A stretch of 64,000 nucleotides of DNA from Octopus sinensis (taxonomy: Eukaryota): the NCBI RefSeq assembly GCF_006345805.1, contig NC_043013.1:17360001-17424000 (forward strand), read 5' to 3'. The position numbers and the translations under genes were made by a program. Within the stretch, counting starts at the first letter, position 1. Every line of letters starts with the position of its first letter. The notes under the pieces are model-generated. The model was not told the DNA's origin, searched no databases, and saw only the letters and a program-made list of their open reading frames with translations. Below, piece after piece: positions 46,111 to 63,152 of the stretch.

Positions 46111-46279
46111 TCATCTGGGCTTGTAATTAGCCTGAAGCCAACGAAGAATCTCTTCCAATCCTTTACCATTCCAGGCACTTATTTCATGGACTGTAATATT
46201 TTGGGTGGAATACTGAATTATTTCTTCCAAGCGAAGGTAGTTTTCAAATTCTGGTCTTGACATTATAGTAGCCATGTCT
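46111..46279 (-). CDS. ARL16: ARL16 terminal coding exon 5 (DMATIMS...YKPR*)
   Basis: ttttatAG acceptor; phase 2 completes NK-I-D; stop at 46113-46111. Confidence 0.95.
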
Positions 46280-49200
46280 CTATAAAAAAAGAGAAGTAAA
46301 GGTATTTAATATCAATGTGATGTGAGTTGTGTAATCTGTTGGGTTGTAAGAGTAAGAACTTGGAGCCTTTACCTTCATATAGTGTACGGAGGAGAGACAG
46401 TTAGACTCTACAACTATTCAAACAATAGCTATGTAATACTAATATTTGCGTGTGCATGTGAAGCAGTGAGCTTTTATGCCAGGCAAAATGTTTAGCGGCA
46501 ATTTGTGCATCTTTACATTCTGAGTTCAAATTCAACCAAGGTCAACTTTGCCTTTCGTCCTTTTGGGGTTGATAAAATAAGTACCAGTTGAGCACTGTGG
46601 TCAATGTAATCAAATTACCCACTGCTCCAAAATTGCTGCCCTTGTGCCAAAATTTGAAAGCAATATTTGTTTGTATGTGTGAATATATAAATATAGGCAG
46701 CTATGGACACATAAGAAGTGCAATGGTATCATAGGAAGGTTAATAGAGAAAGTAGTTTTTATGTATGGTTGATGTTTCTACAGTTGGCGTTAGGAAGGGA
46801 ATTCAGCTGTGGAAACACTGCCAGATCAGACTGGAGCCTGGTGCAGCCTCCTGGCTTCCCAGACCCCGGTCAAACCGTCCAACCCATGCTAGCATGGAAA
46901 ATGGACGTTAAACGATGATGATGATGATGATGTGCAGGTACAATAAACACTAAGAAGGTACAGAAAACAGATTTCCTCAAATGTGCAGGGGTGGGGGATC
47001 CTTAGATGTAGTAGATAGCTTCTGTTATATAGTCGACCAAGTCAGCAGAGAGAGGATGCTCTGAGAGCATAGTTGCTATGGGTTGGTTGAATATATATTG
47101 TGGCATTATTTTTACAGCCAGATGCCCTTCCTTTCACTAGCCCTTACCTACTTGTCAAGTCATGGATTTCTTATTACACACATCTTTGGAGACACAAAAG
47201 AAAAATAAGAACCCAGAGACAGATACATTACAAACAGGTATAAACCAGTAATACTTACATTTTGTTCAGAAGAAGAAGGACAGGTGTATTGGTCAGTTGT
47301 TTGTCTTGTAAAATGGTCAGCAACTGTATACATGCAGCTGAGATTTGCTGTCTGTTGTTTAAATCTATCATATACTGAAACACAAAAAATACCCCAATTA
47401 GCTTTTACCCTTCATCTGTTGTCTGTCTTGCATGGAGCACAGAGTCAATCCTTACTTCAAGGAATCAGTAAGGCTCAGAAATCCCTACAAACCTCAACTA
47501 TATTTCAGTCAGTCTACATGAAAAGCTTCTATGTGGTCATTTGATCAGACAGAAATAACAGCCAAGCAAAATCTGTCTCAAATTATACGTTCCAGTTTTA
47601 GTAAAAAAATGACTCATTGGACAATGTGGTCCTAAGGACAAAAAAAAAAAAAAAGGAAACAAACATGGGATGGTCATAGATGGAATGACATTGATTGTAG
47701 GCATACTTCATCAGGACTGACCTGTGGTTCAACAACTACAAGTTAACTGTTATTACAAGGTCAATTATTAATACAATTATAATCCAGTAAACTTTTGACA
47801 AATAGTTAAATGGGGTTTCACATATTTAATATAAGTGAGTCATTCAAAATGTTCAATTAATTAAAATTACAATTAAAAATAATAATAATGAAATTATTGT
47901 ATACAGTGCTCAGGTGCACCACAACTTGTCACAAGTGCGTATAAAGAATATGCAGTAATGTACAAATGTCTGGGAAGTGAACAGTGTATGAGTCAGATAC
48001 ATGCTTGCATGTGTATGGAGCGGAGAAAAATCAGGTGTAGTGTTGGTGAATCTCAGGAAGCATGGAAGTTTTGAAGGATGCAGTGCTCCGACACTAACAA
48101 CTGATGCCGGCAGTCTGTTCCATGCTTCAGCAACTCTTAGTGTGAAAAAATGTTTCCGAAAGTCATGGGAGCTGTGCTGTTTTCTGACTTTGTAAACATG
48201 TCTACGGGTGTTTGAAAAGGTGCTCAGAGTTATTGTTTGTAAGATGGTTAATAATTTTATGGGTGTCTGCTAATTTTATAGGTGTCAGACGTCGGAGTTT
48301 CAATGTATCCATGCCCAGAGAAGTAAGGCGTTCAGAATATGGCAAATGCCTGATGGAGGGTATTCTCTTGGTTGCACGTTGCTGAACGGTTTCCAGAGGA
48401 TTAATATCCTGGGCCAGATAGGGGTTCCAGACCGGTGGTGCAAATTCCAAGTGAGGCCGTACCATAGCTATATAAAACCTCAGATAAATAGCCAGAGAGC
48501 CGCTCACAAAGGACTCGGTAGGTCATGCCAAGATACCCTCAGCCTTCTAGGTAGTGATAAGAAAAATATATTTGGCTCAATGACTCAAGCAGGTCAAGCA
48601 ATTCAAGGGAAGCAACTTTTGAAGAAAAATTACTTGCAGGTAGTGGGCAGTGAATCTGGGCTTTGATAAGTATGGTGAGATGAACCTGTATGTTTCAGTG
48701 TTATTAAAGCTCCTCGGCAAATAAGTTGGATAACACCAGTTTACTTTCTTTATTGTTTGTTTGTTATTTTTATGGAAAATATGTTCTCAAGAAATTATGC
48801 CAGTCACCTCGCCATTTTTCTTTGACATATAAAGAATGTCTTGAAGAGACTAGATGACAGAATTTCATTGTCAGAAATGAGTGAAAATAGATGCAAAAGG
48901 AACAACTTTTGGTCACGCAACAGAACTAACAAAAAAATTTAAAAAAATTTCAAATCTTGAATGTGCTGAGAAGGATTCTTTGGGGCTTGAATAAATGTAA
49001 AGAAGTTTGATGGAAATATTAGCCATTTTTCATAGTTTCTAAGGATAAGCAAATAGGAAATAACAGTCGCTATCCAAGGACAAAAATTGTGTTACACAGT
49101 ATAAAAATGATAGTAATGATAGTTTTACATACCATAAGATATTCTGTGTCTCTGAAATAACTGTGCCAAATTGGTCCCATGCAACCTCCAAGTTCTCGTA

Positions 49201-52200
49201 TAACAATGTCTATTTTTTTGCTTAATAATACACTGACCATATTTGTACCCACCTAGGAAAGAATAAATCTTATATATAATATAATATAATATAATATAAT
49301 ATAATATAATATAATATATATATATATATATATGCATGTGCACACACACACAATCCATAGACATCACACAATTTAAAGATAGGTAAACAAATAATGATAA
49401 TTAATTCTGTTAGTTTTATCATTTATGATTCAGTCTATATATAAATAGAAAAAAAAGAAATCTTTTGAGTTAAGTTTAAACACAGACATTTTAAATTAGC
49501 CTAATGCAATCATAGGTGGTATCAACAGAGCTGCAAAAATAAACATCACTTAATTTAAGAGCATCTAAACCTAAAGCATAAACTTTTTCTATCAATAAAA
49601 TATAATGTGTGCACTGTTTAGTAATTTGTTGTACTTTTGTCTTTCCCTGCTATCATGGGTTAGATGAATACATATTAAAGAGTCATTGTTTTGCTGGATG
49701 CACTTCCTGTTGCTAACCCTTATCTGTTTTTCAAGTAAGGTATCTTCTTGTCTACAAGAAAGTAGAGCTAGTGGATGATTTTGTTCACAGGGAATGACGA
49801 CAAGCACCAGTTTTTAGCTCAACCCTTTCACATGAAGATGTAAACATTCACACACACATACACACAGTATTCTTGAGGGTGACAAGCTCAGAGGAACATA
49901 GCCAAGCCACTTAGAAAAATAACTCACAATCAGAAGTTTGGTTGTTAGCTTGCTTACACTAATGTAGCTTGAGGGAGGGGGCCACAGTTGGCACTTTTAA
50001 AGGGGCTGTACTTTTGGGTCTGCTGTAGGCAATATATTTTTTTATATGGGGTCCAGGGGCAGCAAACAGAAGGGCTCCCCCCCCCCCCCAAGTAGTACAC
50101 ACTCTAGTTACGCTAGTGGCTTGCTTAATCCATAACAGTGAGTTTAGCAAAATATATTCTGCTTCATATGCGGGCTTATCAGGTTGGGATGTGCATGACA
50201 CAAACACATGGAACCATGACTGAAGAGTTTTCCATTTGAGACCTTTCTATCTTTTATTTAGAGAGTATCTTTTAGATAACATTATCCAATGTGTCAATCC
50301 ATTTTCTCAATGATCAAACTGCAAAATAGAGAAACAATAAATAATAATTTCGTTTTTGGATTTGGTTTGCAAGATTCTTTATATGAGTTCATGTGTTGAA
50401 GCATTTTCAGTCGTGTCTGGGGAGAGTCATTTTCTTTTCACTCACCGGTAAAAGAGTCAAGACTATTGAAAAGGTTGCAAGACGCAACGAAAATTTTAGG
50501 AAAATAAAAATAAGAAATAAGTGGAAATTTTACCGGTGAGTGTGTTACATTATAAGGCACAAAAAGAAAATGACTCTCCCCAGACACAACAGAATAAATA
50601 ATAAAATACGAATAAATATTAAATAAAAAATTATTTATATAAAATTAATGAAATGTTTTCTTACTGTTGGAATAGTTGCTGGAATTTCATGGAGGTTTTC
50701 AAAAGTACCTTTACTTGTACAATCAAAATTTATTAAGGAATTAACAAACATATTTGCGAGCACATAAAATGGACACATATTGTATTAAAATATGCCACAA
50801 CTAAAACAATTTCATTAAAAGACATCCAGTTCTCTATATGTTATGAGAAAATACAGTCACTCACTCTCTCTTTCTCACATGCACACACACACATACATAC
50901 ATACAAAAAATACAAAAAAAAATGCATGCAAATGTATTTATGTATGTGTATATGAAAGATAATGTGTGAGCTCGTGAAACCATCTAAACCCTGCCAGCAT
51001 GGAAAACAAATGTTAAATGATGATGATGATACATACATGTTAAGTATCTGCACAGCTTCTGTCAATGAAATTCTCCTCCTAAGGCATTAGTCAACTCAAG
51101 GCTACATTAAAAGACACTTGTCCAAACAGTTGTGTGGTGGGATTGAACTTGGAATCTCATAGTGGAGGTGATAATACAACTAGCAGGTCCTGAAGCCATT
51201 GTAGTAGAAGTGATACAAGCAGAATGAGGTTACAAAGTGTCTGAGACCCAGTGGCTGTAGTGCATAGGTGGCTGTTTTTTGCCAGTCAGATAACCATATT
51301 TCTGAATGCAACCTAGGATGGGTGTGTATATGTGTGTGTGCATGAGAGAGCGAGAGAGAGAGAGAGAGAGGGGGAGAGAGATGAACTTTGTAAAGATCAG
51401 CAGCTGATTGGAGCCAAAATATTTTCTGGCCCTGAAAAAAAAAAGCAAAAAAAAAAAGCTCTGAAATGCAGTTGTAGCTATGTAGCAAATAGAGATTGAG
51501 ATGTAGTTTCAATCCTTGCTTGAAACCAATCTGCTTCATTTGCACATCCAATGTCCTTGTTAAAGGAAGGAATTTCACTGTAGCCCACACCTGGAGAAAA
51601 TATATATGAAAAGGCCCACTCATGTCTAGTCACAAAACAAATCAAGAATTATTCCTATCTGTTTATAAGACTTCAGATAGAACTTAATTTTTGAAGAGAT
51701 TGGTTGACAAGGTCTTGACCAACCAAGATTTTGAAGAGATTGGCACACAAGGTCTTGCCCAGCCATGCTTCAAGCACATCTTTAATTGGGGTAAAATGAT
51801 TTTCATCCTACTCTTACCTGTGTGATATTTCAGTGTTAATGGTTTCGTTATGAAGAAGGGAGAACAGCCACTAGCATGGAAAGATCTATGCTAGGACCAT
51901 CGTTGTGGGAGCAGATCCGAAATGAGGAAATTTGAGAACAGAGTGGCACGAACGATATGCCTGCAGAATACCTAAAACACAAGTTCCACAGACAACAGGT
52001 GGATCCGAGCAGTAATCAATTAAAATAATAATAATAATGAAATTATTGTATACAGTGCTCAGGTGCACCACAACTTGTCAGAAAGTGCATATAAAGTGCA
52101 TGCAGTAATGTAAAAATGTCTGGAAAGCGAACAATGTATGAGTCAGTTACATGCCTGTGTGTGTATGGAGGGGAGAAATACAAGAGACCGAAAGAGGCCA

Positions 52201-53863
52201 CTTGAATGATCTCCAAGACGATGGGAAGATGACGTGGTCAAATAATGAGGGGTCAAAGAGAAGAGAAGGGTCTAATCAAAGGAAGAATGGAAAGACATTG
52301 AGTAATGTATAAAGGCATCTAATAGTTAAGTTAGCAAAATATTCAGATTTTTCACCTCACTACATTAAGAATGTTAGAAGTATTTGTTTTCATGCAGAAA
52401 GTGAGCGTAGGCATCCTTCTCCTACATCCCAATAATCAATTAATTTCAGTAAATATATATCGATTAGATTTAGGCGAGTTCAAGTGGCATTTCTAACAAC
52501 AGGCCATCCTGTTCTGAGTCTAAGAGGGCCTGATCACACTAGCTGTTTCCTTTTTTTTTCTTTTCTTTTTCCCTTGTAATTACTTTGATATTCATTTCAC
52601 GGTTGATGAAACTGTGTCAGAGCTTTTACAGTCCATGGTCCCCCCTTTTCACACTGGAGCATATATAGAGAACAGAGATTCAGCGTGAATTGTTGCCGGT
52701 TGTTTTGGTGGTTGCGTTATTGTTTAACCCCTGGCCAATTTCCATCAATAAGCGTATAATTAAAGACGTTCCTGCTGGGACCACTATGTCTTATTTATTT
52801 TCAGACATTGTACAATTTAGGACTACATTATCCAGTGTTTCTTTCTGTTGCTTATAAGTACTGGAGAATTGACTGTTATTTCTAGTGAATCGAGTTGCCG
52901 CGTAGTCTTCTCTCATCTCGTTTTTTTTTTAAAGTAGACGACTTTTATTTGAGGGAAAATAGGCTGTTATTTCTAGGTGGGTCGAAGCACCTTTGTTAGT
53001 TTTACAATTTAGTTGCGTTGTAGACCAAATATTAGAAAATAACCGACAATAAGAAAGAAATGAGAAAACAGGAAAGAGAGAAGCAAGAAGTATATTTTTA
53101 TAGAATAATGAAACAGTGTTATAACAATAATAACGTTAGCAAAAAATGTCATTAGTCACCAAGAATTCTCGTGATTTAAATCATTATGCGGTCGCTCGAT
53201 GTGACAGAAACAACAGCCAAATACCCCCAGACTGCGTCCTACCATCTCCAATGAAAAATGGAAAAAAAAAAAAAAAAAAGATGCAACGGAAAACATTATC
53301 TCTGGTATAATAGTCAGGATGCTCATAAAATACATTGTTTGTGATCTTAGTTTTGCTGGACTGAGAATTGACCCAGGGCTAAACAACCAGAAAATGACCC
53401 GGAGACGAATTTAAGATAATAACGACACAAACAAGAATAAATCCGATCCATTTGAATGGCAATTATTAAAGATTGCAAAAAGACTGAAGGTGTATTTTTG
53501 GGAGAAAACATCTGCTTAAACAGACAGAAAACTTGCCTCCAGGGATATGTAATAAAAGCTGTGTATTATATATTGTTAGAGTAATTCTTGCTGTGATCCT
53601 TAACTGGGGGTTATTTTTTATTGTATTGCAAGTAAGTCAGTGGTTGAAAGAACGGTGGGGGAGGAGGACGAATAATAGTACGAACCTTTGAAAAAAAGAA
53701 AACAGGTGATTGAGGAGGGAAAACCATTTCGAAAAAAATCGCACACAGTTTATACACACACATACATGCATAAACACGCATACACACCTATCAATCTATC
53801 TATATCTATCTATATATACATATATACATGCGCGCACGCACACACACACAAGCACATATATGT

Positions 53864-53903
<40 letters not shown>

Positions 53904-54211
53904 GCATGCACATACATACTTGCATTTTAAGTGTTAATAACAGAACACATGTAGTTATTAACACTTACAATTAGCCACACACACACACACATAGAGACCA
54001 AAACACACACACACACCACAATACGGTAACACACACACATCAATCACACACATACACAAACACACATTACACTAACACCAATTAACAAACACAGAATTAA
54101 TAAAACACACACACACACAGTTAGCAACAGTCGACTGTTTCAAAGGATACTTTGCATCCTCTTCATGAGTAAAGTTTTACCAACTCCGGGTGGTCCAATT
54201 AATAAACACAT
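46111..54211 (-). CDS. ARL16: ADP-ribosylation factor-like GTPase 16; complement(join(46111..46279,47259..47374,49133..49252,50665..50723,54151..54211)), 174 aa
   Basis: Translation MCLLIGPPGVGKTLLMKRMQ-NCTSKGTFENLHEIPATIPT-VGTNMVSVLLSKKIDIVIRELGGCMGPIWHSYFRDTEYLM-YMIDLNNRQQISAACIQLL...LLNKI-DMATIMSRPEF...HEISAWNGKGLEEILRWLQANYKPR*. It has a P-loop, PTVGTN, the ARL16-typical RELGGCMGPIW, NKID and ISA motifs. Confidence 0.93.
46770..46932 (+). mobile_element. Family A 3' end in ARL16 intron 4
   Basis: Family core plus GAT tail. Confidence 0.8.
47259..47374 (-). CDS. ARL16: ARL16 coding exon 4 (YMIDLNN...LLNK)
   Basis: tttcAG acceptor, AT|GTAAGT donor; 116 nt. Confidence 0.95.
47878..48720 (-). 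mobile_element. CR1-clade LINE 3' fragment in ARL16 intron 3; 3'UTR-only copies at ~7341-7420 and ~52025-52180
   Basis: YIAMVRPHLEFAPPVWNPY...LETVQQRATKRIP...YSERLTSLG...RR; (ATT)n tail with a shared GAAATTATTGTATACAGTGCTCAGG. Confidence 0.88.
49133..49252 (-). CDS. ARL16: ARL16 coding exon 3 (VGTNM...EYLM)
   Basis: ttcctAG acceptor, ATG|GTATGT donor; 120 nt; contains RELGGCMGPIW. Confidence 0.95.
50413..50587. mobile_element. MITE-like element with 26 bp perfect inverted repeats; relatives at ~11390-11560 and ~42718-42780
   Basis: GTGTCTGGGGAGAGTCATTTTCTTTT at 50413-50438 and its reverse complement at 50562-50587; inner IR CTCACCGGTAAAA. Confidence 0.75.
50665..50723 (-). CDS. ARL16: ARL16 coding exon 2 ((N)CTSKGTFENLHEIPATIPT); the 5' boundary assumes a TG acceptor
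   Basis: Ends ACA|GTAAGA in phase 0 into VGTN; preceded by the U12 branch site TTCCTTAAT. The acceptor position is inferred from reading frame. Confidence 0.8.
50724..54150 (-). other. U12-type (minor spliceosome) intron 1 of ARL16, 3427 nt
   Basis: 5' splice site GTATCCTTT at 54150-54142; branch site TTCCTTAAT at 50740-50732; no polypyrimidine tract. Confidence 0.88.
54151..54211 (-). CDS. ARL16: ARL16 coding exon 1 (MCLLIGPPGVGKTLLMKRMQ + 1 nt)
   Basis: ATG at 54211; GxxGVGKT P-loop; followed by the U12-type donor GTATCCTTT. Confidence 0.92.

Positions 54212-55149: not shown

Positions 55150-63152
<8,003 letters not shown>

What the first reader, a model, noticed from the sequence alone, without database searches (positions are those of the whole stretch)
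50665..54211. ARL16 minor (U12) intron that stays in frame only with a non-canonical GT-TG boundary
Seen: exon 1 ends CAA-A|GTATCCTTT, the U12 donor consensus. Upstream of exon 2 the minus strand reads TTCCTTAAT-AAATTTTG|AT-TGT-ACA-AGT. The first AG (50715-14) shifts the frame and stops early in exon 3. Only TG, TT, TA or AA acceptors keep the frame. The TG site (50725-24), 8 nt after the branch motif, gives a 20-aa segment from Q to PT, matching my recollection of vertebrate ARL16 (NLHEIPATIPT vs DLxEPPPTRPT). Established: U12 3' splice sites are set mainly by distance from the branch point and tolerate odd terminal dinucleotides. Inference: a rare GT-TG U12 intron, or a one-base error or polymorphism (TTTAG to TTTTG).
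Basis: partly seen in the sequence, partly recalled or inferred. Interest (0 to 1): 0.8.

Follow-up and report, generated by a model that had tools for sequence, protein, structure and literature searches.

The report
Octopus ARL16 GT-TG minor intron
The first intron of the octopus ARL16 gene is an ancient minor-spliceosome (U12-type) intron that ends in TG instead of AG; the odd ending is real and shared by four octopod genomes, but it belongs to a known rare class and is already built into the RefSeq protein model.

Summary
The window matches Octopus sinensis CM016875.1 exactly. ARL16 lies on the minus strand in five coding exons. Exon 1 ends CAA-A|GTATCCTTT, the only RTATCCTTT in the window. 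TTCCTTAAT lies 8 nt upstream of ATTGTACAAGT.

The second AG (50710-09) also keeps the frame, giving a 169-aa protein, and one published O. bimaculoides model uses it.

Comparative evidence still favours the TG acceptor (50725-24):
- The 174-aa product is identical to RefSeq XP_029647029.1 / XP_014769920.1 and maps only with GT...TG.
- O. bimaculoides and Argonauta hians carry TG|ATTG at the same site. An O. vulgaris read-through model implies TG or CG there, not AG.
- Sepia esculenta mRNA contigs join exon 1 to the homologous base.
- All differences in exon 2 among the three lineages are synonymous third-position changes.
- Only the long form keeps the 14-residue linker seen in most other phyla.

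The orthologous intron is U12-type in a primate and a hemichordate (AT-AC) and in amphioxus, a gastropod and a bivalve (GT-AG).

Sequencing error is excluded. GT-TG minor introns are a documented rare subtype (29 of about 73,700 conserved animal minor introns). This is a valid new example of a known kind, of modest interest. No octopus RNA could be checked here.

The parts
54151..54211 (-). ARL16 coding exon 1 (61 nt, ATG to CAA-A; the intron is in phase 1)
   Evidence: Identical to the start of RefSeq XP_029647029.1.
54142..54150 (-). U12-type 5' splice site GTATCCTTT
   Evidence: The only RTATCCTTT in the window. Conserved as GTATCCTTT in O. bimaculoides and A. hians. It reads ATATCCTT in Ptychodera and Propithecus and GTATCCTT in Branchiostoma, Babylonia and Potamilus.
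50724..54150 (-). Intron 1, 3427 nt, U12-type with GT...TG termini
   Evidence: This is the only mapping of the 174-aa RefSeq protein onto the O. sinensis and O. bimaculoides loci. Length.
50732..50740 (-). U12 branch-point sequence TTCCTTAAT
   Evidence: Identical 9-mer in O. bimaculoides and A. hians. The branch A lies 9-10 nt from the 3' end of the intron.
50724..50725 (-). Non-canonical 3' terminal dinucleotide TG
   Evidence: TG|ATTG is conserved in O. bimaculoides and A. hians.
50665..50723 (-). Coding exon 2 (59 nt, completes N then CTSKGTFENLHEIPATIPT), followed by a U2-type donor GTAAGA
   Evidence: The Sepia mRNA begins exon 2 at the homologous base. All interspecies differences are synonymous.
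50714..50715 (-). First AG after the branch site (19-20 nt from the branch A). Out of frame; it would give a 46-aa truncated product.
50709..50710 (-). Second AG (24-25 nt from the branch A). In frame; this is the alternative acceptor used by the 169-aa UniRef model A0A0L8HRR5.
49133..49252 (-). Coding exon 3 (120 nt); U2-type GT-AG introns on both sides
47259..47374 (-). Coding exon 4 (116 nt)
46111..46279 (-). Coding part of exon 5, through the TGA stop
   Evidence: The gene span equals the L014 gene call.

Best explanation
Intron 1 of Octopus sinensis ARL16 (window 54150-50724, minus strand) is an ancient U12-dependent (minor spliceosome) intron of the G-type. Its 3' end is TG instead of AG.

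Proposed mechanism, inferred from established U12 biology and not tested here:
- U11 binds the perfect 5' splice site GTATCCTTT.
- U12 binds the branch sequence TTCCTTAAT.
- The 3' cleavage site is chosen mainly by its short distance from the branch adenosine, so the G at 50724 is used even though T precedes it. That G is 9-10 nt from the branch A in Octopus and 8-9 nt in Argonauta.
- The AGs 19-20 nt and 24-25 nt downstream are at or beyond the usual working range.

Splicing joins ...ATGCAAA to ATTGTACA... and yields the 174-aa ARL16 with the linker QNCTSKGTFENLHEIPATIPT.

The TG ending is a derived state that is fixed in octopods. Other bilaterians have AT-AC or GT-AG at the same intron.
For: (1) The donor is the only RTATCCTTT in the window and lies exactly at the exon end. 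The branch sequence lies 8 nt before exon 2.

(2) The 174-aa TG product is identical to RefSeq XP_029647029.1 (O. sinensis) and XP_014769920.1 (O. bimaculoides). It maps to both genomes only as GTATCCTTT...TTTTG|ATTGT.

(3) The window is 100% identical over 12,097 nt to O. sinensis CM016875.1. O. bimaculoides, whose introns are about 90-93% identical, has the same 3' end. A. hians has TTCCTTAATATAACTG|ATTGCACC.

(4) Sepia esculenta RNA-seq contigs carry ATGCAAA|ACTGTACAAGCAAAGGA, the homologous junction. The index lists this product in 43 blocks of the collection, and three of the runs are named in Sepia papers. No shorter isoform using the AG2 equivalent was found.

(5) Across the 20 codons of exon 2, the pairwise differences among Octopus, Argonauta and Sepia number 9, 7 and 12. 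All are at third positions and synonymous, including those in the 15 nt that the AG2 model would make intronic.

(6) The TG model restores the 14-residue linker between KRxQ and PATIPT seen in Ptychodera, Branchiostoma and Propithecus; bivalve, gastropod and annelid linkers vary from 13 to 17. The AG2 model deletes 5 residues.

(7) The orthologous intron is U12-type elsewhere: AT-AC in Propithecus and Ptychodera, and GT-AG in Branchiostoma, Babylonia and Potamilus. Human ARL16 is listed among minor-intron genes (PMC13216214).

(8) GT-TG is a documented minor-intron subtype (PMC1557818 Table 2; PMC8280824; PMC10639083 Supplementary Table S1). The usual branch-to-3'ss distance is 10-20 nt, with an optimum of 11-13 (PMC8199999).
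Against: - No octopus RNA read or cDNA was examined. No Logan transcript contig encodes either full-length octopus isoform.
- RefSeq XP_ models are predictions, and their transcript support could not be inspected here.
- The branch-to-TG distance (8-10 nt) is at or just below the published 10-20 nt range.
- An in-frame AG exists 15 nt downstream and could be used at some level.
- The genomic acceptor in Sepia is unknown, so its mRNA proves the exon boundary but not the dinucleotide.
Confidence: 0.85

Rival explanations
1. It is an ordinary GT-AG U12 intron that uses the second AG (50710-09). Exon 2 then starts at 50708 and the protein is the 169-aa form QSTFENLHE.... The 15 nt ATTGTACAAGTAAAG would be intronic.
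For: This acceptor is in frame. It is the model in UniRef A0A0L8HRR5 for O. bimaculoides, and the A. hians GenBank model uses the same acceptor.
Against: - The AG lies 24-25 nt from the branch A, outside the 10-20 nt range.
- An out-of-frame AG lies between it and the branch site.
- The 15 nt show only synonymous third-position changes across Octopus, Argonauta and Sepia.
- Sepia mRNAs include these codons, and no short form was recovered.
- The short form breaks the 14-residue linker shared with Ptychodera, Branchiostoma and Propithecus.
- No contig encoding the 169-aa product is on record.
- The A. hians model needs a cryptic donor that reads through the U12 5' splice site (QSILSY), a sign that canonical sites were forced.
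Confidence: 0.08
2. Mixed or regulated use of acceptors. TG gives the productive mRNA, while AG1 (frameshift, likely a nonsense-mediated-decay target) and/or AG2 are used at appreciable levels, making the weak 3' end a brake on ARL16 expression.
For: - The TG site is non-consensus and very close to the branch site.
- Both AGs are preserved, though that is explained by their coding role.
- Minor introns with weak sites show higher retention in human cells (PMC8280824).
Against: There is no transcript evidence for either alternative junction in the Sepia assemblies. NMD targets would be under-represented, so this evidence is weak.
Confidence: 0.06
3. Assembly error or rare polymorphism: the true sequence is TTTAG and the intron is canonical GT-AG.
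For: None beyond the rarity of GT-TG.
Against: Three independently assembled octopod genomes show TG at the homologous base (O. sinensis, O. bimaculoides, A. hians). The O. vulgaris protein model implies T/C-G there.
Confidence: 0.01

Closest known systems
Non-canonical G-type (GT-NG) U12 introns: GT-TG, GT-GG and GT-CG minor introns catalogued in SpliceRack (Sheth et al. 2006) and by Larue & Roy 2023
   Same: A perfect U12 5' splice site starting with GT, a U12 branch sequence close to the 3' end, a terminal G kept, and position -2 not A. Animal counts are GT-TG 29, GT-GG 159 and GT-CG 46. SpliceRack lists one mouse GT-TG. GT-TG is listed among human G-type minor introns.
   Different: This is a different gene and lineage. 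The branch-to-3'ss spacing (8-10 nt) is at the short extreme. As far as I could find, this particular intron is not described in the literature (one search found only two versions of one study that mention both ARL16 and minor introns, both about human and zebrafish).
Orthologous ARL16 intron 1 in other animals (primate and hemichordate AT-AC; amphioxus, gastropod and bivalve GT-AG)
   Same: Same gene and same phase 1. The position is identical (after nt 61 of the CDS) in Propithecus, Ptychodera and Branchiostoma. All have the U12 donor RTATCCTT and a TCCTTRAC-like branch site.
   Different: Their termini are canonical (AT-AC or GT-AG). The branch motif ends 10-13 nt from the exon, against 7-8 nt in octopods. 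In Potamilus and Babylonia the donor lies 6 and 9 nt further into the CDS.
U2-type GT-TG introns (for example ARS2/SRRT, conserved between human and mouse; Sheth et al. 2006)
   Same: The same terminal dinucleotides, GT...TG.
   Different: Those have a U2-type 5' splice site and a polypyrimidine tract. This intron has the U12 donor and branch sequence and no pyrimidine tract before the acceptor (TTAATAAATTTTG).

Membership tests
U12-type (minor spliceosome) intron | 5' splice site matching RTATCCTTT directly at the exon end | tested here: met
   GTATCCTTT at 54150-54142, a perfect 9/9 match and the only one in the window.
U12-type (minor spliceosome) intron | Branch-point sequence TCCTTRAY about 10-20 nt upstream of the 3' splice site | tested here: met
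   TTCCTTAAT at 50740-50732. The branch A is 9-10 nt from the TG terminus (8-9 nt in A. hians), at or just below the published range.
U12-type (minor spliceosome) intron | No polypyrimidine tract before the acceptor | tested here: met
   The last 30 nt are ATGTTTGTTAATTCCTTAATAAATTTTG, A/T-mixed and without an extended pyrimidine run beyond the branch motif.
U12-type (minor spliceosome) intron | Orthologous introns in other species are U12-type | tested here: met
   Seven genomes from four phyla carry U12 donors and branch sites at this intron. Human ARL16 is listed as a minor-intron gene.
U12-type (minor spliceosome) intron | Splicing depends on the U11/U12/U4atac/U6atac snRNPs | not testable with these tools
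   Needs knock-down or in vitro splicing.
GT-TG subtype of minor introns | The mRNA junction places GT at the intron's 5' end and TG at its 3' end | tested here: met
   The RefSeq 174-aa protein maps uniquely with these termini in two Octopus genomes. The Sepia mRNA has the homologous junction. The codon substitution pattern agrees. This is indirect for Octopus itself.
GT-TG subtype of minor introns | Junction reads or cDNA from the same species | not testable with these tools
   No octopus transcript contig is in the collection.
ARL16 (ARF-like GTPase 16) | Full-length orthology to annotated ARL16 with an Arf-family domain, and the conserved HGS neighbour | tested here: met
   The best hits are all ARL16 with PF00025. 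HGS lies head-to-head next to ARL16 in O. bimaculoides, A. hians, Branchiostoma and Propithecus.

The most novel reading that the evidence does not exclude
The GT-TG ending, together with an unusually short branch-to-3'ss spacing (8-10 nt), has been maintained since before the split of argonauts and octopuses, and possibly since the cuttlefish-octopus split. This would be because cephalopod minor spliceosomes choose the 3' site almost purely by distance. The weak site would act as a built-in throttle, with the out-of-frame AG as an unproductive decoy, on expression of the ciliary GTPase ARL16.
Probability: 0.15. Interest if true: 0.45.

Novelty: new member of a known kind. Interest (0 to 1): 0.3.

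Why it matters
It is a clean, phylogenetically anchored example of a very rare minor-intron subtype. GT-TG makes up about 0.04% of conserved animal minor introns.

The same orthologous intron appears as AT-AC, GT-AG and GT-TG in different lineages. That makes it useful material for studying subtype switching and 3' site choice by distance in U12 splicing.

It also shows in practice how such introns derail gene prediction. Four octopod annotations give four different ARL16 N-termini, and only the RefSeq model agrees with the comparative evidence. It does not reveal a new mechanism.

Tried and rejected
- Frame argument alone: rejected, because the AG at 50710-09 is also in frame.
- Sequencing error or polymorphism: rejected by three or four octopod genomes.
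- Hidden micro-exon: rejected. The RefSeq protein maps with a single intron, and the Sepia mRNA is collinear with exon 1 plus exon 2.
- A-to-I RNA editing creating an AG: impossible, because position -2 is T in the genome.
- U2-type splicing: unlikely. The donor lacks the U1 consensus beyond GTA and there is no pyrimidine tract.
- Decapodiform genomic sequence: I searched with the neighbouring HGS protein from the Sepia contig. Only transcript contigs and octopod genomes came back, so the Sepia acceptor dinucleotide remains unknown.
- Octopus transcript fragments: a search with the N-terminal 80 aa found none.
- Contigs encoding the 169-aa AG2 product: none on record.
- Gigantopelta locus look-up: failed, product not on record.
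Full report
**What is in the sequence.** On the minus strand, an ATG at 54211 opens MCLLIGPPGVGKTLLMKRMQ. The exon ends CAA-A at 54151 and is followed at once by GTATCCTTT (54150-54142). About 3.4 kb downstream lies TTCCTTAAT (50740-50732), then AAATTTTG, then ATTGTACAAGTAAAGGTACTTTTGAAAACCTCCATGAAATTCCAGCAACTATTCCAACA|GTAAGA, with the exon ending at 50665. All are flanked by ordinary GT-AG introns with pyrimidine tracts. RTATCCTTT occurs once in both strands of the window, exactly at the exon 1 end. TTCCTTAAY occurs twice, one copy being this one.

I enumerated every exon 2 start that keeps the frame. The second AG at 50710-50709 (AAAG|GTACT) is in frame and gives a 169-aa protein...KRMQSTFENLHE... 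The first AG (50715-14) does shift the frame and terminates in exon 3 after 46 aa. So frame alone cannot separate a GT-TG intron (174 aa) from a GT-AG intron that uses a distal acceptor (169 aa).

**Identity of the locus.** The full-length model hits ARL16 orthologues across animals. The cluster of the best hit contains four octopod models:
- RefSeq XP_014769920.1 / XP_029647029.1 (O. bimaculoides / O. sinensis), 174 aa. It is identical to the TG model.
- UniRef A0A0L8HRR5 (O. bimaculoides), 169 aa. It is identical to the AG2 model.
- O. vulgaris CAI9735382.1. It starts inside the intron and reads through its 3' end (MFVNSLINFDCTSKG).
- A. hians GAB1609348.1. It reads through the U12 donor (QSILSY) to a cryptic GT and then uses AG2.

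The window is 100% identical over 12,097 nt to O. sinensis CM016875.1. When the 174-aa protein is mapped back onto the O. sinensis and O. bimaculoides loci, there is exactly one solution: GTATCCTTT...TTTTG|ATTGT.

**Is the TG real?**
- O. bimaculoides is an independent assembly with introns about 90-93% identical. Its sequence from the branch motif into exon 2 is identical.
- Argonauta hians has CAG-A|GTATCCTTT at the donor and TTCCTTAATATAACTG|ATTGCACCAGTAAAGG at the 3' end. It is TG again, one base closer to the branch motif.
- The O. vulgaris read-through model encodes F-D-C across the site, which requires T/C followed by G there.

A sequencing error or private polymorphism is therefore excluded.

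**Which acceptor is used?** There are four independent lines of evidence.
1. A 174-aa protein, 82% identical, is encoded without interruption on transcript contigs that the index lists in 43 blocks of the Logan collection. Three of the runs (SRR23936182, SRR25097173, SRR19578111) are listed as Sepia esculenta larval RNA-seq in PMC10571815 and PMC10141105. All ten contigs, plus two exon-3-skipping contigs, read ...AGAATGCAAA|ACTGTACAAGCAAAGGAACT... Exon 2 therefore begins at the base homologous to window 50723. No Sepia product using the AG2 equivalent was recovered.
2. Across the 20 codons of exon 2, the pairwise differences among Octopus, Argonauta and Sepia number 9, 7 and 12. All are third-position and synonymous, with none non-synonymous. 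This includes four changes inside the 15 nt that the AG2 model would treat as intron.
3. The long form keeps the 14-residue spacer between KRxQ and PATIPT found in Ptychodera (HCSNKGSF..., visibly similar to NCTSKGTF...), amphioxus and a primate; bivalve, gastropod and annelid spacers range from 13 to 17. The short form deletes five residues.
4. Published U12 rules place the 3' site 10-20 nt from the branch A, with an optimum of 11-13 (PMC8199999). TG lies at 9-10 nt, AG1 at 19-20 and AG2 at 24-25, with the out-of-frame AG1 in between.

**Evolutionary context.** The same intron is U12-type in every genome I could fetch.

| Species | Group | Exon 1 length (nt) | 5' end ... 3' end |
|---|---|---|---|
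| Propithecus | primate | 61 | ATATCCTTC...GTCCTTGACggccccgcAC |
| Ptychodera | hemichordate | 61 | ATATCCTTT...TTCCTTGACagcatgattAC |
| Branchiostoma | amphioxus | 61 | GTATCCTTT...ATCCTTAACaataatttaatAG |
| Babylonia | gastropod | 70 | GTATCCTTC...CTTCTTAACcagttttgcAG |
| Potamilus | bivalve | 67 | GTATCCTTC...CCATTAACtcagtttctcAG |

Exon 2 starts ATTGT in Ptychodera exactly as in Octopus. Human ARL16 is treated as a minor-intron gene in PMC13216214.

The intron is therefore ancient. It has switched subtype between lineages, and the octopod TG is derived relative to the gastropod and bivalve AG. The gap between the branch motif and the exon is 7-8 nt in octopods against 10-13 nt elsewhere, so the octopod 3' end is also unusually compact.

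**Comparison with what is known.** GT-TG is an accepted but very rare minor-intron subtype.
- There is one mouse case in SpliceRack (PMC1557818, Table 2).
- It is listed among human G-type minor introns (PMC8280824).
- It accounts for 29 of about 73,700 conserved animal minor introns, 0.039% (PMC10639083, Supplementary Table S1). That survey included O. sinensis.

Keeping the terminal G while position -2 varies (GT-GG, GT-CG, GT-TG) fits the general view that the identity of position -2 matters little in U12 splicing. That view is established knowledge and was not tested here. I found no paper that discusses this particular intron.

**Limits.** No octopus RNA was available. The collection holds no octopus transcript contig for either isoform, and I could not inspect the evidence behind the RefSeq models. 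No decapodiform genome with this locus was reachable, so whether Sepia also has TG is unknown. Minor use of AG1 or AG2 cannot be excluded.

**Verdict.** The GT-TG U12 reading is well supported (about 0.85), and sequencing error is excluded. It is a new, well-anchored example of a known rare class, already implicit in the RefSeq annotation, and of modest interest.

Noticed in passing
window 55789-62627: A compound (TA)n/(TG)n microsatellite of about 6.8 kb lies 1.6 kb upstream of the ARL16 start. GC is 0.16-0.19 and GC skew is up to +0.95 on the plus strand. It sits where the head-to-head neighbour HGS would be expected to begin.
   Followed up: partly
window 50406-50438 and 50562-50594 (ARL16 intron 2): A 33-nt inverted repeat, 94% complementary, with arms 123 nt apart, looks like a small foldback or MITE-like element.
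   Followed up: no
L011 109-513 and L012 111-515 (Sepia esculenta transcript contigs): An in-frame isoform that skips the 120-nt exon 3 (134 aa...ATIPT|FMIDL...) appears in two runs. It would remove the VGTN...RELGGCMGPIW part of the GTPase core.
   Followed up: no
L013, L015, L019, L020, L001: ARL16 and HGS (VHS-FYVE-Hrs) are head-to-head neighbours in Argonauta, O. bimaculoides, amphioxus and a primate. In Sepia one 4.2-kb transcript contig even joins the two mRNAs, with about 440 nt between the two start codons. This suggests a shared bidirectional promoter with overlapping 5' ends.
   Followed up: no
P0001, P0071, P0072, P0073 (octopod ARL16 models): Four public annotations give four different N-termini for the same gene, because pipelines forced canonical splice sites around the U12 GT-TG intron. 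Only the RefSeq model fits the comparative data.
   Followed up: yes
window 53790-54130 (5' part of intron 1) and L013 3130-3350: Long (TG)n/(TA)n dinucleotide tracts lie just downstream of the U12 donor in both O. sinensis and A. hians.
   Followed up: no
L017 568 / L018 571: In the bivalve Potamilus and the gastropod Babylonia, the U12 donor lies 6 and 9 nt further into the coding sequence than in octopods, amphioxus, hemichordate and primate, in the same phase. This could be intron sliding or small exon-end indels.
   Followed up: no
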